Positions 6,245-25,971 of a stretch of DNA of 37,914 nt are shown piece after piece. The DNA is taken from positions 1 to 37,914 of the forward strand of contig NIVC01004156.1 of assembly GCA_002269645.1 (NCBI GenBank), given 5' to 3'. A program made the position numbers and the translations under genes. Below the pieces are notes generated by a model. It ran no database searches. It was not told where the DNA came from and saw nothing but the letters and a program-made list of their open reading frames with translations. The stretch comes from Macrostomum lignano. Lineage: Eukaryota. The stretch's first letter is position 1. Each line of letters begins with the position of its first letter.

Positions 6245-7156
6245 GGGCTGCCGTCTGCTGAAGCTGAAGTCCCCCAGTTACTCTGTCGGGGAACTTTTTA
6301 AATTACACTTATTAATCGCTTTTTTTCTGGCTGTGCCTGAGGCTTTATAAGCTTTTTTTGTGTGTGATCTTTTTAATAATTGTTTTATTGTTTTTTTTCA
6401 ATAACTGAAACATTCCATCTTTGGCCTGTTGTTACATTTACTTATTAGGATTTTTTACGTTTTTAAATAATTGTGAGTAAACTTTAAAAAACTAAATATT
6501 TATTGCTTCTTATGCTACTGGTATTTCTGCTTTTTAGTAGTATTTTATGTTTATTTAAGCGAAATCATTATAAATTTAGCAGAAAATTGGATATAATTGC
6601 TTGTTATATCATATCCAAAAATCATATCCAATACCACCGCGCTCACTGCTACACAGTTGTAATCGGTTAATTTGCTCTGTTTTTCATCTTCCGGACTGTG
6701 TTTTATCGATTTCTTTATTATCATTGCTTGTTTTTCATTCTATTCAATTTCTGAATTTCTGACCCTACATATACTACTGCTGTGATATGCTATAGCGGTT
6801 TCATATGTTTATCAAAAGCTTATCGCTATGACAAAGCACTGCAAGCTTAAGGAACCAAAAATGTGTGCCCCGACTGCAGCTTTGCTGGTGTCTCACTAAC
6901 TCAAAATAATTTACTAAACTACTTGAGTAAGTAGTAATTGATGAATTGCGCTTGAGTTTCTAATAATTTTTCAGCGTCAAAAACTTGTTTTCTCTATTTA
7001 TTGTCAGAAAAAAATGTAAGACAAATAAACATAACACTAAAACAAATCCTTCTTATTGCAAATGGTGATTTTCTTCTTTGCTATTACTGTAGGTACTTGA
7101 AGCATATTTAAGAGGTTTTGTCAGTTACAAATCTTTTTAGTCACAGACAATTAGAT

Positions 7157-7167
7157 GTCTTTCTGTG

Positions 7168-7199
<32 letters not shown>

Positions 7200-7234
7200 C
7201 TGTTTGTCTGTCTGTCTGTCCTGTCTGTCTGTCC

Positions 7235-7282
<48 letters not shown>

Positions 7283-7305
7283 CTGTCTGTCTGTCTGTCT
7301 GTCTT

Positions 7306-7336
<31 letters not shown>

Positions 7337-7345
7337 GACTGTCTT

Positions 7346-7400
<55 letters not shown>

Positions 7401-7457
7401 TTCTGTCTGTCTGTGTGTCTGTCTGTCTGTCTGACTGTCTTTCTGTCTGACTGTCTT

Positions 7458-7514
<57 letters not shown>
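7157..7514. repeat. (TCTG)n microsatellite
   Basis: Near-pure TGTC/TCTG tract about 115 bp upstream of the paralog 1 start. Confidence 0.97.
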
Positions 7515-7632
7515 AACCGTCTATCCATTAGCAATGCACTGGTAGCATTAGTTTAGCAGAATATTTTCACAATCACTGACTCGACTATTCATGGGCTTCA
7601 GCAGTCATTTATTCATTGCCTCTCCTAAGAGC

Positions 7633-8431
7633 ATGCCGCCGCATTGCTGCTTACTGGCGCTGACGCTGCTTGCGGTGGTCAGCGGCTCCCCTCCGACCGG
7701 CAGCGGCACCTTCTACTGCGACAGCGCCAACCGCTTGAACATCCTGGCCGGTCCGGCCGTGCAGCTGGTGACCCGCAACCAGTCCGCGCATTCCTACCGA
7801 CCCGGCTCGCACTGCGAATTCCGGGTCCGCTCGCTGCCGGGCAGCCTGCTGTTCGTTCGCCTGGACGACTCCAACGGCGGTCTCGATGTCGGAGCCAGCC
7901 TCAGCCTGGCCTCCGGCTCCCGCCAGCTGCTAAACGCGTCGCCGCTGCTGCCAGCTCACGCCACCAGCTTGGTGACACCTGCTGGACAGCTCAGTCTGCG
8001 GCTGTCCGTGTCAGCCAGTGCACTGGCCAAGCCCGGCCTGACCGTCCTGGTCCGATCGTTCCTGCACTGCCCGCCGGCTGGGTGGAGCTGTCCAACGCTT
8101 GCTACGGCACCACTGCTGACGGCGAGCTGCCAGCGCGGCTGTCCTTTGCCAACGCCCAGTTGGCCTGCAACTCTATGCGGTCCAACCTGCTGACGCTGGC
8201 CTACGGCGTGCAGGCCGGGGCTGGCATTGAGAATGTGCGACAGCGGCTGGCCGGCTGGAGCCGCGGCCTGGGCGTCTCCAAGGCCTGGATTGGCTTGACG
8301 GATGCCACCGACTGGGCCGCTTCGCCTACTACTGGCTGGACAAGGGCCGCTTCGGAGAGTGAGTGGTGGCGAGACTGTAGTACAGACAGACACTAAAGCG
8401 GTCAGACAGACCGACAGACAGACAGACAGAC

Positions 8432-8486
<55 letters not shown>

Positions 8487-8563
8487 GTGAGTGGTGGCGA
8501 GACTGTAGTACAGACAGACACTAAAGCGGTCAGACAGACCGACAGACAGACAGACAGACAGAC

Positions 8564-8632
<69 letters not shown>

Positions 8633-8635
8633 TAC

Positions 8636-8682
<47 letters not shown>

Positions 8683-8885
8683 AACAAACACTAAGACCGA
8701 CAGACAGACACTGAAACACTAAGACAGACAGACAGACAGACACTGAAACACACAGACACTAAGACAGACAGACAGACAGACAGACACTGAAACACTAAGA
8801 CACTAAGACAGACAGACAGACAGACACTGAAACACACAGACACTAGGACAGACAGACAGACAGACACTGAAACACTAAGACACTA

Positions 8886-8929
<44 letters not shown>

Positions 8930-9629
8930 GGACTGACCCAAAACACTAAGACACTACTAAGATAGGCGTAGACAGGAAAACATTAAGATCTACCCTACCT
9001 CAAGCGGAAACTAAGGCAGGCAAGCAAAAGATAAGAGCATCTAACAATCCTGTTAGCAAATATTCCAAGAGCGAATTCGCCCCCGCTAACTCAAACAATT
9101 CAGGCACTCAGAAATCGGCTGCTCATCCGGCAGCTCAGCTTATCGGGACTGCCGGGCTTCGGAGCGCTGCGGCCTGATGTCCTGGTCCAGCAGCAGCAGC
9201 AGCCGCCCGCTGCTCATGTCGGCCTGCTCAGCCGCCCGGCCGTTCGTGTGCGCCATGCCGATCGGCGGCACGGACCGGTTCGACCCGTCCCCGACCGGCG
9301 CCCTGCCGAACGCTACCAGCTTCAGCGGCGAGGCCACTCCAACCGTCATGTGGCTGTGGATTGCCGTGCTGTCCGCCTGTCTGGTTGTCGGCCTGCTGAC
9401 CGCCGCCATCTGCCTGGCTGTGCGCTACTGCGCCGGTGTGAAGCCGCCCAATGCTCAGACTCGTCAATTGTATCAGCTGAGAGCAGCTCAGCCCAGGCTG
9501 CAGCCGCCGCCGCCGCCACCTTACACACCAGAGGCGAATAACCAGTCTGCTGCCCTCCCGCCTCTGCACCAGCTGCCGCCGCCGCCTTACACGCCTGGCA
9601 ATTTTACCAGTGCCAGTGCCGATGTTTAG
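7633..9629 (+). CDS. Type I membrane protein: signal peptide, divergent CUB domain, C-type lectin-like domain, TM helix, cytoplasmic tail with two PPxY motifs (paralog 1)
   Basis: Exons 7633-8358 (donor GTGAGT at 8359) and 9104-9629, phase 2. Signal-like [18 protein letters not shown]; CUB-like [23 protein letters not shown]; CTLD C-P-A-G-W...CY...AQLAC...WIGLTD...YYWLD...ERC...RPFVC; [26 protein letters not shown]. Single-base frameshifts at about 8071 and 8313. AATAAA at 9644-9649. Confidence 0.8.
8383..8960. repeat. (CAGA)n microsatellite with AGACACTAAG/CACTGAAA interruptions
   Basis: Fills intron 8359-9103 and is the reverse complement of the 7157-7514 tract. Confidence 0.97.
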
Positions 9630-11868: not shown

Positions 11869-14191
11869 ATGACCAACTCCGCATCTTTAACTTGCCTGGC
11901 GGCGTTGCTGCTGCCGCTGCTGCAGCCGGCGCAACCTCAGCTGACGCTGGCGCCACCTCCGGCGAGCTTTTACTGCGACACCCCGGCCGGGATTACATCA
12001 GGCAGTCGGATTTCTATGTGCACACCAGGCCGGCTGGCTCAGACAGGTATCGGCCAGGTGACAGGTGCTCGTTTCACGCGGTGTCACAGAATCCCGGGGC
12101 GCTCTACTTTGTCCAGGTGAGTCGTGCATGTAGCGACCTCTGCCCAGTTATTAATGTGCGGTGCACCTGAAGGCTGCGTACGGCTGTTCAGTCCCAGGAC
12201 TAGGGGGGGGGGTCGCCACACACACCCTCAATTACCCCAGCTAATGCTGGCACCCATTTTACAGCTGGGTGAATTGAAGCAATGTAGAGTCAAGCGTCTT
12301 GCTCATGGACACAAATTGTTCCAGTTGGGGTTGGGAATCGAACCCCAGTCCTTTCAGTCGCGAGTCCAACGCTCCAACCACTAAGACTTGTATTAATTGT
12401 CAAATTTGAGAAATCTGTCAACAATGGAGTTCTTGGTGGAGTAGAGATGTTGGTATTTTATTTGCGTTTTCCCATTTCTTATTACTTATGAGTAGCAAGT
12501 ATCCAATTCGTGTTCTCCCCGCCCGGGCTTTGCTTCCTACCCAGATACTAAACGTCTCCATGCCGACGGCTAATCTGTCTGTCTGGTCGGAGCAGCACAA
12601 CCTGCTCACCGTTCCCATGGGCGGCTCCCCGCCTGGTCACGACATGGCCCTCACCACTTCGCGGCCAACTGTTACTGTCGCCTTTGTCGCTGCCGCCGCT
12701 GCCGACGCCTCTTCCACCACCGGTGTCGGCGTCATCCTCCGGTGCGCCAGTTCAGCGGCTGCCCGCCAGACTGGCGGCCCTACGGCGGCTACTGCTTTGG
12801 CAACGCCGGCTCGGCTGGCCCGCTTCTGAGCTTTGATGACTCGCAGACCGCCTGCGTTGCTATGCGGGCCAACCTGCTGCATCTGCCGCCTGGCCTGCCC
12901 GGCATCGAGACCATCACCGAGCTGTACAGGCAGCTGCCTGGCCAGCTGACCAAGGACAACTGGATTGGCCTGACGGACTACACCAGCGCTGGCCAGTTCT
13001 ATTATTATTGGCTAGATGGCTCGCAGTTCTATGAGTGAGCTCTATGAGAATGACTTTGGGTTGACTCAAGAGTGACTGAGGCTACTCAAGAGTAACTGAG
13101 GCTACTCAAGAGTGACTGAGGCTACTCAAGAGTAACTGAGGCTACTCAAGAGTGACTGAGGCTACTCAAGAGTAACTGAGGCTACTCAAGAGTGACTGAG
13201 GCTACTCAGGAGTGACTGAGGCTACTCAAGAGTGACTGAGGCTACTCAGGAGTGACTGAGGCTACTCAGGAGTGACTGAGGCTACTCAGGAGTGACTGAG
13301 GCTACTCAGGAGTGGCTGAGGCTACTCAGGAGTGACTGAGGCTACTCAGGAGTGACTGAGGCTACTCAGGAGTGACTGAGGCTACTCAGGAGTGACTGAG
13401 GCTACTCAGGAGTGACTGAGGCTACTCAAGAGTGACTGAGGCTACTCAGGAGTGACTGAGGCTACTCAGGAGTGACTGAGGCTACTCAAGAGTGACTGAG
13501 GCTACTCAGGAGTGACTGAGGCTACTCAGGAGTGACTGAGGCTACTCAAGAGTGACTGAGGCTACTCAGGAGTGACTGAGGCTACTAAGGAGTGACTAAA
13601 GCTAATCAAGATTAACTGAGGTTACTCAGGAGTGACTGGGGCTACTCAATATGAACTGATGCCATTCAAGAGGGACTAAAGCTACTCAAGAGTGACTGAG
13701 GCTACTCAAGAGGGATTGAGTCTACTCAATAATGACTGAAGCTACTCAAGAGTGACGCAAAAGTAACTGAGCTCACTAACTAAATCAGACTCAAAAAAGC
13801 CCCCTCCCTGCTGCTGCTGCAAGAAGGCTTGAATAATTATTTCTTAACCATCGCCAGGCCCGATCTGATTGGCTGTCAGAGCTCCCGCCTTGGCAACAAT
13901 CGCAACTGCCAGCTAGAGGAGCGCTGCGCCTTCTTCATCACGAACATACTGTACCTGTTTAGGTTCATCGTCATGGACAAGTGCAGCGCTAAGCGAAGCT
14001 ACGCCTGCTTTATGCCGGCCGGCGGTGCGGCCGAATTCTACAAGGTGCCGAAGTTCTCCATTTTCTCGTCGGGCGCTTGGGCCTGGGCCATTGTTATTGG
14101 CTGCCTGTTCGCTATCGGTGTGGCCATCGGCATTGTCTACGCCGTGCTGCGTCTGTGCCACGCCAGGCAGTCCAAGGCGGCGGACGTCTAG
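11869..14191 (+). CDS. Type I membrane protein: signal peptide, divergent CUB domain, C-type lectin-like domain, TM helix, short tail (paralog 2)
   Basis: Exons 11869-12116, 12545-13034 and 13858-14191. Aligns to paralog 1 (FYCD, YRPGDRCSF, CPPDW..YGGYC, ACVAMRANLL, WIGLTD, YYWLD, IGC..ERC) and shares the phase-2 intron after WLDxxxFxE. TM AWAWAIVIGCLFAIGVAIGIVYAVL. Single-base frameshifts at about 11989 and 12740. Confidence 0.8.
12150..12385 (-). mobile_element. tRNA-derived SINE, antisense, in intron 1 of receptor paralog 2
   Basis: Minus strand reads CTTAGTGGTTGGAGCGTTGG (A box), then GGGGTTCGATTCCC (B box, 12333-12346), then TTGTGTCCATGAGCAAGACGCTTGACTCT...CAGCTGTAAAATGGG, which resembles CORE/V-type central SINE domains. 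The 3' boundary is uncertain and no TSD was identified. Confidence 0.7.
13062..13755. repeat. 20-bp intronic minisatellite, about 34 copies
   Basis: Unit GAGTGACTGAGGCTACTCA(G/A) in intron 13035-13857. Confidence 0.96.
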
Positions 14192-15382: not shown

Positions 15383-16255
15383 ATGGCCACCGACCACCAG
15401 TTCCAGCGCCAGCCGCCTCCGCCGGCCCTCGCCAGTCGATTTCTGGCCTCGATTCTGTCGGCCGCTCCCGGTGACCCTGCTGAGCTGAGCACGCCAGAGG
15501 CGGTGTCCAACTCGTCAAGCGGCGACACCTGCCGACAGCAGCAGCAACTTCTGCAACAGCAGCAACAACAACAGCAACAGCAGCAGCAACTGCTGGCCAA
15601 GCAGCCGGAGCAGCAGGAGTGGTCCAGGCGCATCTCGGCCGGCCTCTGTCCGCACTGCGACGCCCCGGCTGCCACGGACGAGCAGCGCGACTTTCACGAG
15701 CGGGTGCACGCCATGGACGAGCTGTACCGCTGCCAGCTGTGCGCCGCCCGCTTCGCCTACGCCTCCTCATTAGAGATGCACGTGGCCATGCACACGGACC
15801 CCGACCTGCACTACCGCCTGCACTGCACCCGGGCCAAGCCCAACACTCAGCATCATTTCGCTTCTCCGCCGCCGCCTAAGAAGCTCTACCTCAGCACATT
15901 CCTTGGCAACAGCGGCGGCGGCGGTGGTGGCAGCGGCGTGTCTTCCGCCCAGCAGCTGCTTCCGCCGCAGCTTCAACATCATCATCAGCAGCAGCAGCAG
16001 CTGGGCTGCGTGACAGCCAATCAGCCGCCGGTGTCCATGCACACCTCCCTGATGCCCGGCGCTGCGTACGGGCTGGCCTCGGCGCTGGATGACTCGGCGC
16101 TGCACCGCCAGATGCAGCAGCTGCAGCAGCCGGGCCAGCCGAGTCAGCAGCAGCAGCTGCAGGCGCACAGGCAGCACAGGTGTCCTCACTGCGGCAAGTC
16201 CTATGTCCGGCTCGGCAACTTGCGCAACCACCTGCAGCGGTCGCATCAGGCCTGA
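15383..16255 (+). CDS. C2H2 zinc-finger protein with polyQ/polyG tracts, about 290 aa, single coding exon
   Basis: Intact ORF from ATG 15383. Three fingers: CPHCDAPAATDEQRDFHERVH, YRCQLCAARFAYASSLEMHVAMH and HRCPHCGKSYVRLGNLRNHLQRSH. GC-rich codon usage like the neighbouring genes. The frame stays open upstream, so the start is not certain. Confidence 0.85.
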   Translation: MATDHQFQRQPPPPALASRFLASILSAAPGDPAELSTPEAVSNSSSGDTCRQQQQLLQQQQQQQQQQQQLLAKQPEQQEWSRRISAGLCPHCDAPAATDEQRDFHERVHAMDELYRCQLCAARFAYASSLEMHVAMHTDPDLHYRLHCTRAKPNTQHHFASPPPPKKLYLSTFLGNSGGGGGGSGVSSAQQLLPPQLQHHHQQQQQLGCVTANQPPVSMHTSLMPGAAYGLASALDDSALHRQMQQLQQPGQPSQQQQLQAHRQHRCPHCGKSYVRLGNLRNHLQRSHQA

Positions 16256-18023
16256 GCTGGCTGGCTCTAATCTTATCTGTCTGGCGCTTTCACAACACAA
16301 CAGACTGCAACACAGCTGAGTAAAGAGCGGCTGCTTTAGCTGGACAGAGAATTAACAAGCAGAGTTTCATATTTTTGCCCGAAGAAGAAGAAAAAAAGCA
16401 ATTTTCAAACATTTTCAAGTTAACAAAATGAAAAAACACACAAATTTATTTATTTATATAAGAGCGAGGCGTCGGTCCCTCCAACCATTTTGTTGTTGCA
16501 ATGTTTCTGTCTCTTTCTGTTAATTTAATTTTGTGCATTGATTTTTTTCAAATTTCTGCTTATTTGTTAGTTTGTTTTACTTGCTTATAATGCCCCTAAT
16601 TTGTACTCTCGATCTGCAAGGTTTCTTTGATTTAATCGCCGTGTTGCGCCGGCCGTCAGCTGCGCACCGATCCATTATAATAGTATTATTTACTATATAT
16701 AATAATATTAGATTCATTATGCAGGTATGCTCATGTCGTAGGTTATTAGATTAGTTCTCACCGTGCTTGCTGTCCTCTCCATTGTTTGCTTCATATTGTT
16801 ACACTACTTACTTGTGTGCTGTCTGCCGCCTGTGTACTCGAGCTGATTGATAATATTTGAATATTTAATAATCAAATTAAATATGCGAAAGAATGCAAGA
16901 CACGGGCGCTTTTCACTTCTCGAACAGCGCGTCCTGGCTCTGTGCCCCCGGCCCTCTACATATTCAACCGTGAACTTTTAGTCTTTCCTGTCTCTCTGCT
17001 TATATTTATAATTGATTTATCTGCTATTAAAGTTTTTTACAGAACACTTGTGTTCGCTATAGGAATATCCTAGCAACCGGCCCAGATCTATCGGCCTTAC
17101 GCAATGCCCCCCCCGCACTGTTCGTGTATCTCCAGTGTTCCCTGGCTGTACATTTTTGCACTCGGATGTCTGGCAGTTAAGAAACATTCTCAAAAAAATC
17201 TGCTTTATTACATAATTTGTTATAACTGATTTTGGTCAATTCGGCCGCCTACAAAATATAGTTTATAATAACTGGTATTGCTGCTTTAATTGTCCCGAAT
17301 CCTGCATACGGACGTACCATATCTACGTGCATGCATAGGTCACCTGTAAGTCTGCCATGCCCCAGCTAACTGTTGCTTATTTATCAACCGCAATGACACA
17401 ACACTAACCACACCTCTGTAATGAGTACACAGATCAAGTCACATTCTCTCTGTGCTACTGTGGCCCGTGTGTCCCTATTACCTGTTGGATTCAATTTCTG
17501 ATGGCTCCCATTGATTTCTGTTGTTGAATTTCAGACAGCAGAGACTGGGTGCCTTGTCTTGCTTGTTTCATGCTTTCGCATAGTCATTTGCTGAATTTGT
17601 AAGCCTAATCTCCAAAGCCGCGCCCCTGTTAATCCCAGATCTGCATCATATTCGCTTATGTTGATGTTGCAATTCATCTCCCATAAATACCCCCGACAGT
17701 TCTGTCCGTTCGGTAAGGACTCTGCATGTATTTGAGTTCGCAGATCCTTGATTCATCTTATGTATAACTTAAAGCAAAGCTTTTTTGTCTGCATGTGTAG
17801 GGTGTGAGCTCGTATCTAATGTGTTTGTGTGATAATTTCCCAAATTTGTTAAAGTTTAGCGTCGATCGAACTAAGTTTCTGAAGTTTTTTTCTGTTCAAT
17901 TTCCCAATGTAATTTTTCCATGCATTACAATCAAATGGAAAATACATACGTCTTTATATGCATAACAAAATCGATGGCATGGTTGATTTGTTCTTTTGAA
18001 TATTTACTAATACATACAAATTC

Positions 18024-19440
18024 ATCAGCCACCACCCCATCCACCGCCTGCCCTAATGTACACATCAGCCACCACCCCATCCACCGCCTGCCCTAATGTA
18101 CACATCAGCCACCACCCCATTTACCGCCTGTCCTAATATACGCATCAGCCACCACCCCATTTACCGCCTGTCCTAATATACGCATCAGCCACCACCCCAT
18201 CTATCGCCTGCCCTAATATACGCATCAGCCACCACCCCATCTACCGCCTGCCCTAATGTACACATCAGCCACCACCCCATCCACCGCCTGCCCTAATGTA
18301 CACATCAGCCACCACCCCATCCACCGCCTGCCCTAATGTACACATCAGCCACCACCCCATTTACCGCCTGTCCTAATATACGCATCAGCCACCACCCCAT
18401 TTACCGCCTGTCCTAATATACGCATCAGCCACCACCCCATCTATCGCCTGCCCTAATATACGCATCAGCCACCACCCCATCTACCGCCTGCCCTAATGTA
18501 CACATCAGCCACCACCCCATCCACCGCCTGCCCTAATGTACACATCAGCCACCACCCCATCCACCGCCTGCCCTAATGTACACATCAGCCACCACCCCAT
18601 TTACCGCCTGTCCTAATATACGCATCAGCCACCACCCCATTTACCGCCTGTCCTAATATACGCATCAGCCACCACCCCATCTATCGCCTGCCCTAATATA
18701 CGCATCAGCCACCACCCCATCTACCGCCTGCCCTAATGTACACATCAGCCACCACCCCATCCACCGCCTGCCCTAATGTACACATCAGCCACCACCCCAT
18801 CCACCGCCTGCCCTAATGTACACATCAGCCACCACCCCATTTACCGCCTGTCCTAATATACGCATCAGCCACCACCCCATTTACCGCCTGTCCTAATATA
18901 CGCATCAGCCACCACCCCATCTATCGCCTGCCCTAATATACGCATCAGCCACCACCCCATCTACCGCCTGCCCTAATGTACACATCAGCCACCACCCCAT
19001 CCACCGCCTGCCCTAATGTACACATCAGCCACCACCCCATCCACCGCCTGCCCTAATGTACACATCAGCCACCACCCCATTTACCGCCTGTCCTAATATA
19101 CGCATCAGCCACCACCCCATCTATCGCCTGCCCTAATATACGCATCAGCCACCACCCCATCTACCGCCTGCCCTAATGTACACATCAGCCACCACCCCAT
19201 TTACCGCCTGCCCTAATGTACACATCAGCCACCACCCCATCTACCGCCTGTCCTAATTTGCGCATCAGCCACCACCCCATCTATCGCCTGCCCCAATGTA
19301 CACATCAGCCACCACCCCATCTATCGCCTGCCCCAATGTACACATCAGCCACTACCCCATCTATCGCCTGCCCCAATGTACACATCAGCCACTACCCCAT
19401 CTACCGCCTGCCGGAATTTACGCATCAGCCACCACCCCAT
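18024..19440. repeat. 40-bp minisatellite, about 35 copies, with a 240-bp higher-order period
   Basis: Unit CCCTAATGTACACATCAGCCACCACCCCATCCACCGCCTG. The lines starting at 18061, 18301, 18541, 18781 and 19021 are identical. Confidence 0.97.
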
Positions 19441-19452
19441 CCGCTGCCTAAA

Positions 19453-19471
19453 CTAATTTTATTTTATAAAG
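19453..19471 (+). promoter_or_regulatory. 3' splice acceptor (candidate trans-splice site) at the TMX2 5' end
   Basis: Branch-point-like CTAAT (19453-19457), T-rich tract TTTATTTTAT, then AAAG ending at 19471. The next base starts the TMX2 frame. Confidence 0.65.
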
Positions 19472-20601
19472 CTCAAAGCTTCTGCATTGCTAACAATATT
19501 CTTGGCGCTGCCAAGCCTGAGATCTCTGGTCAGCCAGTCCGCTGTGGACCAGGCCCTGACCCTGATGCATCCCTACTTCCTGGTCAACTTCCTAATGGCT
19601 GGCGCTTTCATCATAACCAAAACGCTGCCTCCGGTATGCGACTTTCTGTTCGATAACTGCCTGCTCGAGCTGCGCCAGTGGGAGATCTTCACCTTTCTTG
19701 GCTGCGTTATTGTCTTTAAAAACAAGCGCCAGCCCACGGTGGCCAGCTATCTCACCAACTTCTGTATGTACGCCAAGATGTCCAATATGGTGATGTTCTT
19801 CCAGGAGAACCCGGTTTACGCTGTCGCTTATGCCATCGTCTGGCTTGTGCAGGTAAGTGTTTAATCTCTTTGAGACAGGCAGAAAGACAGAGACAGACAC
19901 TAAGGCAGACACTAAGACAGACAGACAAACACTAAGGCTGACAGACAGACAGAAAGGCTGACAGACAGACAGAAAGACAGACACTAAGACAGACAGACAG
20001 ACATACAGACAGACACTAAGGCAGACAGACAGACAGACACTAAGACAGAAAGACAGACAGACAGACGCTAAGGCAGACAGACAGACAGGCTGCGAGTCAA
20101 CTGCCCATCCCCTGCTTCTCGGATTCTCAGGCTTCGCTCCTTCGCCAGCCGGTGTACCGCGGCCCCGACACCATCGTGTATTTCAACGACAAAACCCTTG
20201 AGGAGGAGCTGAAATCCTGCGACCCCCGGGTCTACTGGCTGATTGAGTTCTACGCCGTGTGGTCGCCGCCGTGCGCCGACCTCGCCCCGGTGTTCGCCCG
20301 CCTGTCAAATGACTACGGGCTGGACAATCTGCGCTTTGGCAAACTGGACGTCACCAAGTACCCGAAAGTGGCTGAAAAGTACGGCATCGACCAGAGCGGC
20401 TGGAGCCGCCAGCTGCCCACCGTGGCGCTGTTCAAAGCCAACAAGGAGGTGGACAGGCGGCCGCTTGTGGGCGCCAAGAAGCGCGTGGCCAGGTTCGTGT
20501 TCAGCTACGACAATCTCGTGTCGGCCTTCGGGCTGGCCGAGCTGTATAACGAGTGCACAAAGAACCCGCTGCGACCCGGGGCCGCTAAGAAGACCGACTG
20601 A
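19472..20601 (+). CDS. TMX2: Thioredoxin-related transmembrane protein 2. No ATG at the expected N-terminus; first genomic ATG is at 19565.
   Basis: Exons 19472-19852 (donor GTAAGT) and 20131-20601. Motifs match TMX2: [71 protein letters not shown] (SxxC site), [24 protein letters not shown]-terminal KKTD is a KKxx ER-retrieval signal. Confidence 0.93.
19872..20088. repeat. (CAGA)n / AGACACTAAG microsatellite in the TMX2 intron
   Basis: Same motif family as 8383-8960. Confidence 0.93.
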
Positions 20602-20885
20602 AGACTCAACTAGTTGCTATGGCCTTCAACCTGGCGATTGAGCTGGAGCTGTGCCAGGATTCTGTTAGCAAAATAATTTGCGCATTTCATTAATTCTCTT
20701 AGCCTTTTTATCTGCTGTGCATTCAGCGAGACTCAAACTGCTTGAATCAGTTGGATGAGTTCATAAAATTATTAAGAATTTATCCTCCGCCTTAGGTTTT
20801 GCCTCGCTTCTGCCACCTTTTTGCGTCTGACTTAGCACCAGTCAATTAAAACTAGCTTGCATAGCATAGTCTGTGCAATTTCTAA

Positions 20886-21612
20886 CTCCCAGATCCTCAG
20901 TTGCTGGGTCACTGCCAGCCTCCCAGATCCTCAGTTGCTGGGACACTGCCAGCCTTCCAGATCCTCAGTTGCTGGGCCACCACCAGCCTCCCAGATCCTC
21001 AGTTGCTGGGCCACTGCCAGCCTCCCAAATCCTCAGTTGCTGGGCCACCACCAGCCTCCCAGATCCTCAGTTGCTGGGCCACTGCCAGCCTCCCAAATCC
21101 TCAGTTGCTGGGCCACCACCAGCCTCCCAGATCCTCACTTTCTGGGCCATTGCCAGCTTCTTGCATCCTCAGTTGCTGGGCCACCGCCAGCCTCCCAAAT
21201 CCTCAGTTGCTGGGCCACCACCAGCCTCCCAGATCCTCACTTTCTGGGCCATTGCCAGCTTCTTGCATCCTCAGTTGCTGGGCCAACATCTCAGACCATC
21301 AGTTGCTGGGCCAACATCTCAGACCCTCAGTTGCTGGGCCAACATCTCAGACCCTCAGTTGCTGGGCCAACATCTCAGACCCTCAGTTGCTGGGCCATTG
21401 CTAGCTTCTTGCATCCTCAGTTGCTGGGCCATTGCGAGCCTCCCAGATCCTCAGTTGCTGGGCCACCGCCAGCCTTCCAAATCCTCAGTTGCTGGGCCAC
21501 CACCAGCCTCCCAGATCCTCACTTTCTGGGCCATTGCCAGCTTCTTGCATCCTCAGTTGCTGGGCCATTGCCAGCCTCCCAAATCCTCAGTTTGCTGGGC
21601 CACTGCCAGCCT
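20886..21612. repeat. Composite 26-35-bp minisatellite downstream of TMX2
   Basis: Core ATCCTCAGTTGCTGGGCCA with variable linkers (CCAGCCTCCCAG, TTGCCAGCTTCTTGC, ACATCTCAGACC). Confidence 0.93.
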
Positions 21613-22817
21613 TCAGACCAACTAGCTGATTTACCGCACTGCGATATTGCAGTCTTACTGCCTAATGGCAGATAGAGTTATGATTCTGTGCCGCAAGCAG
21701 TACGTGTACATTAGATACATTAGACTAAACGCCATGCATGCTACTCGTAGTTCAAGTGAGCAGCTGATTCTGACTCGAATTGACAGCATTCTAATCAATA
21801 CTTAGTAGGATTTCTAACCCATCTACCGCTTAGAAGTTTATTAACGCAATATGCTAAACTATGATTTATTATAAATCACAGTCGCCTCATTTGGACAATC
21901 CTCGTGTGCGTGAGAATGCAATTAGTCCTTACTGTATGCGAATCTGTACTACCTGTAGTCAGTGGATAGTATTGTTGTTAGTATTGCTCAACAATGCCTT
22001 CTGTTAGTTGTTTTGACCAATCTTTGTTAGCGAATTGTCAATCCTTGTGCAGCCGCTGCTTGTTGGAATTGTCATTTTTTACCATTCTGATTTTCGGCCA
22101 CTCCCGCTGTCCAAGTGGCTAAGTTAAATTAATAAAACAAAATAAAATAGCTTTGGATTTTTTATTGCAATTTCACTGCGTTATTTTGTGTGCTAATTAT
22201 AATTATCCGATGTGATAAGATAAGACCTGAGGGAGAGAGATAAGATTAGATAGCACAAAAGAAGCCGCCATAAAATGCGTCTAAATCAATTGCAAGGCTT
22301 GGCTCTTAGACTAGCAGCAATTAGTTCTATAGAATTATCGACTAGGAATTATTCTCAACGTGCTGTGAAACTTGGGCGTCAAAAGAGTCAATGTGCAGCT
22401 TAGGACTGTCGTCTAGGCGTGTTGCGCAATCTTTAAAAGGTGAAAGTCCATGTACTTTACAAGCACGAAGCTTCTTGTCAGAAAGAATTCGGTGTATTAA
22501 TGTACTTTTATTGTATTTGAGCTGCAGTATCTAGGGAAGTATTTATGAGCAAGAAGCAGCATTTAGATTTGATAAAAATAAACTGATCATCCAGACCCGA
22601 AATATTTCAAAAAGTCGACTTTGTGATTGATTTAGGAGTGTTAATTTCTGGATCTCTTGACATCAGTAGCTAGGAGGAGAAAAACCCGGCGCCACTCCTA
22701 GAGTTACTCTTAAGGAGGTAGGAGTCTCCTGACTCTTGACTCCTCATCTTAGTTTCCTAGCACAGGCTCTCGGTTTCAAGTCCAAGTTAAACGCAGGAAT
22801 TCCATAGTCTAGGCCTG

Positions 22818-23035
22818 TATACATCCATCAATTGAATGTGCATCCACCCATTGAATGTACATCCATTCATTGAATGTACATCCATCCATTGAATGTACAT
22901 CCATCTATTGAATGTACATCCATTCATTGAATGTACATCCATTCATTGAATGTACATATATCCATTGAATGTACATCCATCTATTGAATGTAAATCCATC
23001 CATTGAATGTACATCTATCCATTGAATGTACATCC
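22818..23035. repeat. 19-bp minisatellite, about 11 copies, just upstream of COPS4
   Basis: Unit ATTGAATGTACATCCATCC. Confidence 0.95.
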
Positions 23036-23100
23036 AGCAGACCAGCCTATTCCAAGCCGGCGCGCACCCACCCCTCCTCTCCTGCATGCTCGGCGGGCCA

Positions 23101-25971
23101 ATGAGCGCTCAGCTAGAAGAAGAGCTTCGCCGCATCAGCGCCATAGACAACGCCTCCGTGGCGGTGCACAAATACGAGCTGCTGCTCAAAACCATCCTCA
23201 ACCAGGATTTGAACGCCGCTAAGCAGCAACTGCAGCTGTTTCTCAACTTCCTACTGGATGAGTCGGTTGGCCTGGCCGTGTCCAGACAGGTGGTGGCCGA
23301 CCTGGTCGAGTTGCTGAGCAGCCGGATTGAGTCCAGCGCCCAGGTCGGTTTGGAGACCTGCCAAGTCATGCTGGCCTGCCTGCAGAATCGGGCCATCTCG
23401 TTCGAGGACCAGATTGTGGGTGTCCGCCAGCTGCTGGCTCGCGGCCTGGAGGCGCAGGGCCGCTACCTGCAGGCCGCCGAGGCGCTTGCAGCCATCGATA
23501 TGGAGTCCGTGCAGAAGCAGTTCAGGTAAGCATGCCTTGCAGCCGTCATGGGATAATACAGGCCTATACTCAGATCCTCAGCTTGGGTCTCCGCCCCTCC
23601 TACAGCCCTCCCTCCGGATCTTCAGCTTGGGTCTCCGCCCCTCCTCCAGCCCTCCCTCCGGATCCTCAGCTTGGGTCTCCGCCCCTCCTACAGCCCTCCC
23701 TCCGGATCCTCAGCTTGGGTCTCCGCCCCTCCTCCAGCCCTCCCTCCGGATCCTCAGCTTGGGTCTCCGCCCCTCCTACAGCCCTCCCTCCGGATCCTCA
23801 GCTTGGGTCTCCGCCCCTCCTCCAGCCCTCCCTCCGGATCCTCAGCTTGGGTCTCCGCCCCTCCTCCAGCCCTCCCTCCGGATCCTCAGCTTGGGTCTCC
23901 GCCCCTCCTCTAGCCCTCCCTCCGGAGCCTCCGTCTGGGTCTTCGCCCCTTCAGCTCCAACTCTCCTGGATCCTCAGCTTGGGTCTCCGCCCCCTCCAAC
24001 CCTCCCGAATCCTCAGCCTGGGTCTCCGCCCTGCCTCCAGATCCACGGTAACCAAATTCCCTTCCACTCCGCCCCGATGGCAGCCGGGACGAGAAAGCCC
24101 GCGTCCTGCTGAAGACTGTGGAGCTCTACCTGCGCGAGAAGGACGCCGACAAGGCCGAACAGGCGCTGAGTCGCTGCCAGCTGGCCGCCAAGGACCCGCC
24201 GCACCTGCAGCAGTACAAGGTTAGTTGCTATGTAGACGCGAGTTAAGCAGAGTTAGCCGCGGTTAGTACGCAGCTATATAGGTACATAGCAGCTCTGAGC
24301 TGTGAACCCGCCACAGTTCCAGCACAAACTGCTCAATGCTTTTAGCTGCACACCTGCGGCTCAGGTGTGTTGCTATTTAGAGCACACGGCTATCACGAGA
24401 AAACCTGCATCATCCGATAACTGTCAGACCCATTTGATTAAACCTACCTGTCAGGTGTACTACGCCAGAGTCCTTGATTTAAAAGGCAAATTCTACGAGG
24501 CCGCTATGCGCTACATAGAGCTGTCGCTGCAGGCTGGCGAGACTGAGCACCAGATGCAGCACTTGGAAGCCGCCACCGTGTGCACCGTGCTGTGCCCGGC
24601 GTCCTCACAGCGGTCGGCCATGCTGGCCAGGCTGTACAAAGACGAGCGCTCGCAGCGGCTGGCCTGGCGCGGCCTTGTGGAGAAACTCTTCCGGGTGCGT
24701 CACCGCTCTTCAATTAGTCATGAGTCAACGCTCTTTAATTAGCCATGAGTCACCGCTCTTTATTAGCTTTGAGTCAACGCTCTTTAATTAGCCATGAGTC
24801 ACCGCTCTTTAATTAGCCATGAGTCACCGCTCTTTAATTAGCCATGAGTCACCGCTCTTTAATTAGCCATGAGTCACCGCTCTTTAATTAGCTTTGAGTC
24901 ACCGCTCTTTAATTAGCCATGAGTCATCGCTCTTTAATTAGCTTTGAGTCACCGCTCTTCAATTAGTCATGAGTCAACGCTCTTTAATTAGCCATGAGTC
25001 ACCGCTCTTTATTAGCTTTGAGTCAACGCTCTTTAATTAGCCATGAGTCACCGCTCTTTAATTAGCCATGAGTCACCGCTCTTTAATTAGCCATGAGTCA
25101 CCGCTCTTTAATTAGCTTTGAGTCACCGCTCTTTAATTAGCCATGAGTCATCGCTCTTTAATTAGCTTTGAGTCACCGCTCTTCAATTAGTCATGAGTCA
25201 ACGCTCTTTAATTAGCCATGAGTCACCGCTCTTTAATTAGCCATGAGTCACCGCTCTTTAATTAGCCATGAGTCACCGCTCTTCAATTAGCCACGAGTCA
25301 ACGCTCTTTAATTAGCCATGAGTCACCGCTCTTTAATTAGCCATGAGTCACCGCTCTTTAATTAGCCATGAGTCACCGCTCTTTAATTAGTCATGAGTCA
25401 CCGCTCTTTAATTAGCTTTGAGTCACCGCTCTTTAATTAGCTTTGAGTCTTCGCTCTTTATTGATAAATGCTTTGAGTCCCCGCCCTGCAGTCTTGAGCC
25501 AGCAGTTTAGCGGCAGCCAAAGGCATGGCAGTCTCTCGCCCCACTCCACACTACCAGGAGCGCCTCGTCCGCCGCGACGAGCTGCTGGAATTCTCGGCCA
25601 GCCTGCAGCCGCACCAGCGCCAGGCCAGCCCGAACTCGGACGGCCTCACAACCCTGGAGGCGGCGGTTGCCGAGCACAACCTGCTGGCGGTCAGCCGGCT
25701 GTATAACAACATCAGCCTGGCCTACCTGGGCCAGCTGCTGGAGGTGCAGCCGGAGCGGGCGGAGCAAATGGCCGCCCGGATGATCGCCGAACAGCGGCTT
25801 GTCGGCTGCATCGATCAGATTCGCGGCTTTGTGCAGTTCGAGGAGCGCCACCCGATGAGCCTGTGGGACTGCCGCATCCGGGACCTGTGCGAGCAGGTCA
25901 ACTCCGTCTGCGAGCGGGTGGCCGGCCTGCACCCGGACTGGTACCAGGCCGCCTGCCAGGCCAATGTCTGA
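23101..25971 (+). CDS. COPS4: COP9 signalosome subunit 4 (PCI domain), 404 aa
   Basis: Exons 23101-23525, 24084-24219, 24455-24694 and 25558-25971 total 1215 nt in a continuous frame. Motifs: ESVGLAVSRQ, RAISFEDQ, DMESVQKQF, YKVYYARVLD.KGKFYEAA, QRSAMLARLYKDERSQ, LQPHQ, AVAEHNLLAVSRLYNNI, AARMIAEQRLVGCIDQI, WD..IRDLCEQVN. AATAAA at 26085 and 26163. Confidence 0.96.
23570..24040. repeat. 44-bp minisatellite, about 10 copies, COPS4 intron 1
   Basis: Unit GGATCCTCAGCTTGGGTCTCCGCCCCTCCTACAGCCCTCCCTCC; period 44 (23581 to 23625). Confidence 0.95.
24700..25455. repeat. 25-bp minisatellite, about 30 copies, COPS4 intron 3
   Basis: Unit CATGAGTCACCGCTCTTTAATTAGC; begins about 5 nt after the donor at 24695. 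Confidence 0.97.

What the first reader, a model, noticed from the sequence alone, without database searches (positions are those of the whole stretch)
19453..19567. TMX2 has no start codon where one is needed; a flatworm spliced-leader AUG would supply it exactly in frame
Seen: a strong acceptor (CTAAT, T tract, AAAG|19472) is followed in frame by [31 protein letters not shown] before the first ATG (19565). An in-frame TAA lies just upstream at 19454. This segment resembles the hydrophobic N-terminus of human TMX2 (MAVLAPLIALVYSVPRL, recalled). The nearest plausible upstream ATG-plus-donor (GTAAGG at 17713) is phase 1 and does not fit. Established: flatworm spliced leaders end in AUG, which can act as the initiator Met. 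Inference: trans-splicing creates the start codon, giving a ~284-aa protein with its N-terminal hydrophobic segment.
Basis: partly seen in the sequence, partly recalled or inferred. Interest (0 to 1): 0.75.

Follow-up and report, generated by a model that had tools for sequence, protein, structure and literature searches.

The report
Flatworm TMX2 gene lacking upstream ATG
In this Macrostomum lignano window the TMX2 gene's reading frame runs 31 codons upstream of its first ATG, which the worm's ATG-ending spliced leader could explain by a mechanism already known in flatworms, but the sequence alone cannot separate this from two ordinary alternatives.

Summary
The sequence facts are correct: an in-frame TAA at 19454, an AG at 19470-71, 31 ATG-free codons, the first in-frame ATG at 19565, and a two-exon TMX2 gene of 283 codons. 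The window is from Macrostomum lignano. Its 35-nt spliced leader (SL) ends in ATG, and 45% of its conserved genes are trans-spliced.

All 95+ complete TMX2 homologues carry at least 6 residues (median 12) upstream of the position of this ATG. Four weak tests (p about 0.02-0.09 each) suggest the frame is coding upstream of it. A missing start codon is therefore likely.

First, the acceptor is not strong: ATAAAG does not fit the species' YTNCAG motif, and it is also a canonical TATA box (TATAAAG) about 100 nt before the ATG. Second, cis-spliced upstream ATG exons are not excluded.

No RNA evidence was reachable. My weights are: SL-AUG initiation at 19472 about 0.38, a cis 5' exon about 0.28, and the gene's own ATG at 19565 about 0.22. 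An SL AUG serving as initiator is already established (Cheng et al. 2006), so this would at best be a new member of a known kind.

The parts
19454..19456 (+). In-frame TAA stop that closes the TMX2 frame upstream
   Evidence: Translation of 19454-19852 starts with a stop codon.
19453..19471 (+). T-rich tract CTAATTTTATTTTATAAAG. It can be read as a branch-like CTAAT, a pyrimidine tract and an AAG acceptor. It can equally be read as a TATA box (TATAAAG, 19465-19471).
   Evidence: Sequence. TATAAAG occurs only twice on the + strand of the window. The bases do not match YTNCAG (PMC8629364).
19472..19564 (+). 31 ATG-free codons in the TMX2 frame ([31 protein letters not shown]). The first 11 codons are AT-rich and use atypical codons. 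The last 20 look like coding sequence.
19565..19567 (+). First in-frame genomic ATG. It aligns with an internal conserved hydrophobic position (L of LLxP[YH][YH]) in homologues.
   Evidence: Alignments A1 and A2.
19472..19852 (+). TMX2 coding exon 1. Its 5' limit is provisional; the donor is cag|gtaagt.
19853..20130 (+). Intron, phase 0, filled by an (AGAC)n microsatellite; the acceptor is ttctcag|g.
   Evidence: Homologue alignment is continuous across the junction.
20131..20601 (+). TMX2 exon 2. It carries the thioredoxin domain with WSPPC, a C-terminal KKTD, and the TGA stop.
18023..19441 (+). 40-bp tandem repeat, 35.5 copies, with a 240-bp higher-order period. It ends 30 nt before the AG. 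Every unit carries an ATG that opens an out-of-frame ORF running through the TMX2 start, so the repeat must be absent from a translatable TMX2 mRNA.
17331..17351 (+). Candidate cis 5' mini-exon ATGCATAGGTCACCT followed by the donor GTAAGT. It is phase 0 and joins 19472 in frame (MHRSP-LKAS...).
17658..17718 (+). Candidate cis 5' exon (ATG 17658 to 17712) followed by the donor GTAAGG. It is phase 1 and joins the second AG (exon start 19479) in frame.
19536..19552 (+). Two further in-frame AG acceptors, giving exon starts at 19538 and 19553. With an SL AUG, the 19538 start would give [15 protein letters not shown], which has the N-terminal length typical of invertebrate TMX2.

Best explanation
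The TMX2 pre-mRNA of Macrostomum lignano is SL trans-spliced at the first AG after the T-rich tract (19471|19472). This removes the upstream 40-bp repeat with its 35 out-of-frame ATGs. The 35-nt SL ends in AUG, which then sits directly in frame with CTC AAA GCT. It is the first AUG on the mRNA, so scanning ribosomes start there. The product would be a 284-aa protein whose first ~20 residues ([19 protein letters not shown]) form a signal-peptide-like hydrophobic segment ahead of the conserved HPYF transmembrane region.

Shown: the sequence facts, the species, the SL sequence and the general mechanism (from the literature), and the fact that homologues extend upstream of the genomic ATG.

Inferred: that trans-splicing happens at this site, and that the extension is translated.
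For: - Species. The M. lignano UniProt model P0042 matches TMX2 exon 2, its 3'UTR and the CSN4 exons of the window almost exactly, apart from frameshifts.
- SL. The sequence is CGGTCTCTTACTGCGAAGACTCAATTTATTGCATG. 30% of all genes and 45.3% of human-conserved genes are trans-spliced (PMC8629364).
- Mechanism. The SL AUG is in frame in 28% of S. mansoni trans-spliced mRNAs, and more than 40 cDNAs need it (Cheng 2006, via PMC9851317). The SL's final ATG is described as a start codon in Macrostomum (PMC10468722).
- Homologue N-termini. Among 102 TMX2 homologues, the number of residues upstream of the column of the window's first Met has a median of 12. Invertebrates have 9-15, bivalves 22-23 and fish 21. 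Only four truncated fragments have 0-2.
- Signs that the frame is coding upstream of the ATG. A family HMM gains 4.3 bits from the extension against 2.2 +/- 1.1 for shuffles, p about 0.05. In 19505-19564, all 5 Leu codons are CTG, 5 of 6 CTG trinucleotides are in frame (p about 0.02), and GC at codon positions 1/2/3 is 0.70/0.50/0.80. ALLTIFLA resembles fish ALLTTFFA, p = 0.03-0.06.
- No ATG lies in any frame from 19377 to 19564. 19472 is the only in-frame AG upstream of the coding-like stretch.
- The repeat upstream must be removed for TMX2 to be translated.
Against: - No transcript, read or annotated protein for this gene could be reached (supplement searches).
- The acceptor ATAAAG|C does not fit YTNCAG, which is found at 44% of M. 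lignano trans-splice sites. Its -3 base is A.
- The same bases form a canonical TATA box about 100 nt before ATG 19565.
- Codons 1-11 of the extension have GC3 of 0.36 against 0.75-0.86 in the gene. They use TTG (twice), CTA, GCA, TCT, ACA and ATA, each of which appears 0-1 times in the other 252 codons. The codon-usage score of the whole extension sits inside the non-coding distribution.
- Cis-spliced ATG exons that fit exist upstream.
- A stop-free run of this length is common here, at 31% of positions.
Confidence: 0.38

Rival explanations
1. A conventional cis-spliced 5' exon, lying upstream of the 1.4-kb tandem repeat, carries the ATG. It is spliced to the AG at 19471 or 19478, so the repeat lies in a ~2-kb first intron. 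Candidates are ATG 17331-17345|GTAAGT joined to 19472 (MHRSP-LKASALL...) and ATG 17658-17712|GTAAGG joined to 19479 (MLMLQFISHKYPRQFCPF-A-SALL...).
For: - All four GT[AG]AG donors in the unique DNA between the upstream gene and the repeat have an ATG-open frame that joins in frame to one of the AGs.
- Shuffles give 1.1 +/- 1.0 such donors, with P(>=4) = 0.03. Other regions of the window give 0-2.
- GT[AG]AG is the species' donor motif, and mean intron length is 1.1-1.4 kb.
- 55% of conserved genes are not trans-spliced.
- This reading explains the homologue N-terminal lengths and the coding-like signals as well as the SL reading does.
Against: - No evidence of transcription for any of these exons.
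- At least one phase-0 candidate is expected by chance in 37% of shuffles.
- The gene is otherwise intron-poor, with one 278-bp intron in 850 nt of CDS.
- It relies on the same weak AAG acceptor and has the same atypical codons at 19472-19504.
Confidence: 0.28
2. There is no missing start. TATAAAG at 19465-19471 is the core promoter. Transcription starts near 19495, where a CA lies 30 nt downstream of the box. The first AUG on the mRNA is 19565, and the protein is 252 aa starting MHPYF. The open frame upstream of the ATG is chance.
For: - There is a canonical TATA box about 100 nt before the ATG. Only two TATAAAG sites occur on the + strand of 37.9 kb.
- No ATG lies in any frame from 19377 to 19564, so 19565 would be the first AUG.
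- Composition switches from 32% GC to about 65% GC near 19505, where a transcript would begin.
- The first 11 'codons' look non-coding.
- Stop-free runs of this length are common, at 31% of positions.
- An M. lignano promoter defined by RAMPAGE (ELAV4) ends with TATTTAAG about 25 nt before the presumed start.
- The first transmembrane segment, [15 protein letters not shown], would be intact.
Against: - The protein would have the shortest N-terminus of about 98 complete homologues. All of these have at least 6 residues upstream of that column, and the Met aligns with an internal conserved Leu.
- There are coding-like signals in 19505-19564 and an HMM gain, each at p about 0.02-0.05.
- The ATG context is poor, with C at -3 and C at +4.
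Confidence: 0.22
3. Two other solutions to the same missing start.
(a) The SL is added at one of the downstream in-frame AGs, giving exon starts at 19538 or 19553. The 19538 start yields [15 protein letters not shown], which matches the typical invertebrate N-terminal length.
(b) This copy has lost its own ATG. For example, ATA at 19496 lines up without gaps with the Met of a bivalve TMX2. The copy would then use a near-cognate codon or be a decaying paralogue in a polyploid genome.
For: - There are in-frame AGs at 19536-37 and 19551-52.
- The 12 residues before PYF match insect homologues in length.
- An ungapped alignment from ATA 19496 to bivalve P0008 gives p = 0.03, and to P0011 p = 0.05.
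- M. lignano carries duplicated gene copies.
Against: - These AGs have no pyrimidine tract. Each is preceded by out-of-frame AGs a few bases upstream that would be used first.
- The bivalve match fails for P0018 and P0044.
- The rest of the ORF is intact, with all family-invariant residues present.
Confidence: 0.12

Closest known systems
Flatworm mRNAs that take their initiator Met from the 3'-terminal AUG of the spliced leader (Cheng, Cohen, Ndegwa & Davis 2006, J Biol Chem 281:733; called 'slORFs' in PMC9851317)
   Same: The organism's SL ends in AUG. A candidate acceptor places that AUG in frame with a conserved ORF. That ORF has no genomic in-frame AUG where homologues have N-terminal residues.
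   Different: In the published cases the SL-mRNA junction was seen in cDNAs. Here no transcript was available. The acceptor is atypical for the species, and two ordinary alternatives remain open.
Thioredoxin-related transmembrane protein 2 (TMX2) of other animals
   Same: Identity to mollusc, arthropod and nemertean TMX2 is 44-52% over about 87-93% of the length. The protein has a thioredoxin domain with WSPPC, a C-terminal di-lysine motif (KKTD), and N-terminal hydrophobic segments beginning at the P[YH][YH] motif.
   Different: The open frame extends 31 residues upstream of the column where invertebrate homologues have 9-15 and fish have 21. The first genomic Met sits inside the conserved motif rather than at the N-terminus.
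SL trans-spliced and operon genes of Macrostomum lignano (Ustyantsev & Berezikov 2021; Wudarski et al. 2017)
   Same: This is a conserved housekeeping-type gene. The flanking genes (C2H2 zinc finger, TMX2, CSN4) are on the same strand. Tandem repeats fill the intergenic space, as that study describes for operons. A public model (P0042) fuses TMX2 to CSN4.
   Different: The repeat-adjusted distances are about 1.0-1.4 kb, at or above the 1-kb operon threshold used in that study. The acceptor hexamer ATAAAG does not match [T/C]TNCAG.

Membership tests
TMX2 (thioredoxin-related transmembrane protein 2) | Thioredoxin-fold domain | tested here: met
   Pfam PF00085 scores 50.5 bits (cut-off 23.5) over residues 144-237.
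TMX2 (thioredoxin-related transmembrane protein 2) | Best full-length matches are proteins named TMX2, and family-invariant residues are present | tested here: met
   Hits named TMX2 from molluscs, arthropods, fish and cnidarians have E-values of 1e-86 to 1e-45. The invariant residues W171, C175, S186, F196, K198, D200, P223, R236 and P238 are all present.
TMX2 (thioredoxin-related transmembrane protein 2) | Atypical single-Cys active-site motif (S-x-x-C) and a C-terminal di-lysine ER-retrieval motif | tested here: met
   WSPPC aligns with the family consensus WSPxC, and the C-terminus is KKTD. That these are the defining motifs of TMX2 rests on my own knowledge of the family.
TMX2 (thioredoxin-related transmembrane protein 2) | N-terminal hydrophobic (membrane) segments ahead of the thioredoxin domain | tested here: met
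   Kyte-Doolittle peaks fall at residues 36-47, 70-77 and 114-123, with a further peak at 2-12 if the extension is translated.
SL-AUG-initiated flatworm mRNAs (Cheng et al. 2006) | The species has a spliced leader ending in AUG | tested here: met
   The window is M. lignano. Its SL is ...CAATTTATTGCATG (PMC8629364).
SL-AUG-initiated flatworm mRNAs (Cheng et al. 2006) | The mRNA is SL trans-spliced at the proposed acceptor | not testable with these tools
   No M. lignano reads or transcripts are held. Look-ups found nothing. The SL itself is absent from the window, as expected for trans-splicing.
SL-AUG-initiated flatworm mRNAs (Cheng et al. 2006) | The SL AUG is in frame with the conserved ORF, with no intervening stop | tested here: met
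   An exon start at 19472 is in frame, and there are no stops up to 19565. By chance this holds for 1/3 of AGs.
SL-AUG-initiated flatworm mRNAs (Cheng et al. 2006) | The genomic ORF lacks its own AUG where orthologues have their N-terminus | tested here: met
   Complete homologues have 6-24 residues (median 12) upstream of the column of the first genomic Met. There is no in-frame ATG back to the stop at 19454.
SL-AUG-initiated flatworm mRNAs (Cheng et al. 2006) | Translation actually starts at the SL AUG | not testable with these tools
   This needs ribosome profiling, N-terminal proteomics or reporter assays.
M. lignano SL trans-splice acceptor sites | [T/C]TNCAG immediately before the exon (the top motif, found at 9,551 of 21,754 sites) | tested here: not met
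   The site reads ATAAAG|C. The motif is present at only 44% of sites, so missing it does not exclude trans-splicing.
TATA-box core promoter | TATAAA-type box about 30 nt upstream of a transcription start, with the first AUG downstream being the start codon | tested here: inconclusive
   TATAAAG lies at 19465-71, and ATG 19565 would be the first AUG. The position of the transcription start cannot be tested.

The most novel reading that the evidence does not exclude
TMX2 of M. lignano has lost its own initiator codon, perhaps by ATG to ATA at 19496. It now depends entirely on the trans-spliced leader's AUG, which also gives the protein a vertebrate-like, signal-peptide-like hydrophobic N-terminus that other invertebrate TMX2 proteins lack. 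That would be an example of an in-frame SL AUG making a native start codon dispensable and reshaping how a membrane protein is targeted.
Probability: 0.12. Interest if true: 0.4.

Novelty: new member of a known kind. Interest (0 to 1): 0.25.

Why it matters
If the SL AUG is the real start, pipelines that trim the SL, including its ATG, before ORF calling will truncate or mis-start this protein and others like it in Macrostomum. The predicted topology and targeting of TMX2 would also change, from 252 aa without a signal-like segment to 284 aa with one. This is useful for annotation and is one more documented case of a known flatworm mechanism. It does not open a new question.

Tried and rejected
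An exact-match scan of metagenome contigs for the exon's 5' end found nothing.
- Homologue databases. Neither homologue search returned a Macrostomum TMX2 apart from the broken fusion model P0042, and no flatworm orthologue was named. The suggested comparison of flatworm 5' ends could therefore not be made.
- Closest homologue. P0001 (52% identity, Logan run DRR639055, organism unknown) has its own ATG 7 nt after an acceptor-like site and was not informative.
- Gene lists. Supplements of Grudniewska 2016 and 2018 hold no TMX2 entry.
- Promoter sequences. Those in Wudarski 2017 are stored truncated, so general TATA use in this species could not be assessed beyond one primer.
- Codon-usage score. 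The log-likelihood was trained on only 892 codons from the window. It places the whole extension in the non-coding range, but training windows are self-scored, so I used it only qualitatively.
- Rfam and the SL in the window. Rfam found nothing in the window, and the SL sequence is not encoded there.
- ATA 19496 as a former start. The alignment with a bivalve Met held for only 2 of 4 bivalve sequences, so I kept it as speculation only.

Full report
**Observation.** Every coordinate in the finding is correct.
- TAA at 19454-56 is in the TMX2 frame, and AG lies at 19470-71.
- The frame then reads [31 protein letters not shown] before the first ATG at 19565.
- Exon 1 ends at 19852 (cag|gtaagt). 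An intron filled with (AGAC)n ends at 20130. Exon 2 runs to TGA at 20599-601.
- This gives 283 codons, or 284 with an added Met, and a C-terminal KKTD.
- No ATG occurs in any frame between 19377 and 19564.

On their own these facts are not unusual. A stop-free run of 37 codons is found at 31% of positions in this repeat-rich window. Three of the seven AGs between the stop and the ATG are in frame, as expected by chance.

**Gene and species.**
- The protein is TMX2. Its best matches are mollusc, arthropod, nemertean and fish proteins named TMX2 (44-52% identity, E down to 6e-86). It has a Pfam thioredoxin domain, a WSPPC motif, and all family-invariant residues.
- One hit, P0042, is a Macrostomum lignano UniProt model. 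It matches TMX2 exon 2, the 3'UTR and the CSN4 exons of this window almost exactly, apart from frameshifts. The window is therefore M. lignano.
- Flanking genes on the same strand are a C2H2 zinc-finger ORF (15383-16252) and CSN4 (from ATG 23101).

**Background from papers.**
- M. lignano has one 35-nt SL, CGGTCTCTTACTGCGAAGACTCAATTTATTGCATG.
- 30% of its genes and 45.3% of human-conserved genes are trans-spliced. The top acceptor motif is [T/C]TNCAG, found at 9,551 of 21,754 sites (PMC8629364).
- All flatworm SLs end in AUG, and the AUG can act as initiator (Cheng et al. 2006, cited in PMC12582326).
- In S. mansoni the SL AUG is in frame in 28% of trans-spliced mRNAs, and more than 40 cDNAs need it (PMC9851317).
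- The Macrostomum genome paper explicitly calls the SL's final ATG a translation start codon (PMC10468722).
- The proposed mechanism is therefore established. Only its use by this gene is in question.

**Is a start codon really missing?**

I aligned 102 homologues. The number of residues upstream of the column of the window's first Met has a median of 12. Invertebrates have 9-15, bivalves 22-23 and fish 21. Only four obviously truncated fragments have 0-2. The window's Met aligns with an internal conserved Leu of the LLxP[YH][YH] motif.

Further tests are each weak:
- A family HMM gains 4.3 bits from the extension against 2.2 +/- 1.1 for shuffled extensions (p about 0.05).
- In the 20 codons 19505-19564, all five Leu codons are CTG (the gene's preferred codon). 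Five of six CTG trinucleotides are in frame (p about 0.02). GC at codon positions 1/2/3 is 0.70/0.50/0.80.
- ALLTIFLA resembles the fish N-terminus ALLTTFFA (p = 0.03 against shuffles, 0.06 against random ORF peptides).

Taken together, I judge it about 75-80% likely that coding sequence extends upstream of 19565.

1. The acceptor is not strong. ATAAAG|C misses both specified positions of YTNCAG other than the AG, and its -3 base is A.
2. The same bases are a canonical TATA box, TATAAAG at 19465-71, one of only two on the + strand.
   - A CA lies 30 nt downstream of it, and composition jumps from 32% to about 65% GC near 19505.
   - A transcript starting there would have ATG 19565 as its first AUG.
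3. The first 11 codons of the extension (19472-19504) have GC3 of 0.36 against 0.75-0.86 in the gene.
   - They use TTG (twice), CTA, GCA, TCT, ACA and ATA, each seen 0-1 times in the other 252 codons.
   - The whole extension scores within the non-coding range on a codon model that is admittedly small.
4. Cis-spliced alternatives were dismissed too quickly.
   - ATG 17331-17345|GTAAGT is phase 0 and joins 19472 in frame.
   - All four GT[AG]AG donors in the unique upstream DNA can be joined in frame to some AG.
   - Shuffles give 1.1 +/- 1.0 such donors, with P(>=4) = 0.03. Control regions give 0-2.

**A constraint common to all readings.** The 40-bp tandem repeat (18023-19441) carries an ATG in every unit. 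These open an out-of-frame ORF (19216-19656) that runs through the TMX2 start. A translatable mRNA must therefore lack the repeat. That requires trans-splicing, cis-splicing, or transcription starting downstream of 19376.

**Weighing.**
- Prior odds for 'SL AUG needed' are about 0.45 x 0.1-0.15. Prior odds for 'ATG on a small upstream cis exon' are about 0.55 x 0.05-0.15. These are similar.
- The sequence does not separate the two. The excess of fitting donors nudges slightly toward cis-splicing. The in-frame first AG, and a conserved gene in a heavily trans-spliced genome, nudge toward the SL.
- The TATA/ATG-19565 reading explains the AT-rich first 11 codons. It conflicts with the homologue N-termini and the coding-like 20 codons.
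- My estimates are: SL AUG at 19472, 0.38. Cis 5' exon, 0.28. Own ATG 19565, 0.22. Other (SL at 19538/19553, or a lost ATG with near-cognate initiation), 0.12.

**What could not be done.** No RNA evidence for M. lignano is reachable with these tools.
- A metagenome scan was empty.
- No Macrostomum or other flatworm TMX2 orthologue is in the protein collections.
- Supplements of the transcriptome papers do not list TMX2.

**Verdict.** Even if it is true, it is one more instance of a mechanism described in 2006. Its main value would be for gene annotation in Macrostomum.

Noticed in passing
window 18023-19441: A 40-bp tandem repeat with 35.5 copies at 94% match, and a 240-bp higher-order period at 97%. 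It ends 30 nt before the TMX2 AG. Each unit has an ATG, and the last units open a 146-aa out-of-frame ORF (19216-19656) across the TMX2 start.
   Followed up: partly
window 19873-20088; also about 7112-7553 and 8397-8758: (AGAC)n/(GTCT)n microsatellites. One fills most of the only TMX2 intron, and similar tracts recur elsewhere in the window.
   Followed up: no
window 20886-21612 and 22820-23030: Two more tandem repeats (34-bp and 19-bp units) lie between TMX2 and CSN4. The 19-bp array ends about 70 nt before the CSN4 ATG (23101). This repeats the TMX2 arrangement of a repeat directly in front of a gene's 5' end. It fits the published remark that repeats inflate intergenic distances in M. lignano operons.
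   Followed up: partly
window 20260-25780 (protein P0042): The public M. lignano model A0A1I8FLT... fuses TMX2 exon 2 and its 3'UTR to CSN4 and contains several frameshifts. It is a mis-annotation, and it may reflect a read-through (polycistronic) transcript covering both genes.
   Followed up: partly
window 17026-17045: ATTAAA is followed by gttttttacag|aac. TTACAG is an exact match to the M. lignano trans-splice motif [T/C]TNCAG. It lies between the zinc-finger gene and TMX2, and its role is unknown.
   Followed up: no
window 7552-8393 and 12574-13035: Open frames with WIGLTD-type motifs suggest C-type lectin-like genes. They were not checked against any family library.
   Followed up: no
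L001 560-600 (Logan run DRR639055): The contig of the closest TMX2 homologue (52% identity, organism unknown) has an acceptor-like tttttctttacag|gtcaatt just 7 nt before its ATG. An AUG-ending SL would be out of frame there.
   Followed up: no
window 19496-19498: The in-frame ATA sits where an ungapped alignment places the initiator Met of a bivalve TMX2 (P0008, p = 0.03). The match does not hold for two other bivalve sequences.
   Followed up: partly
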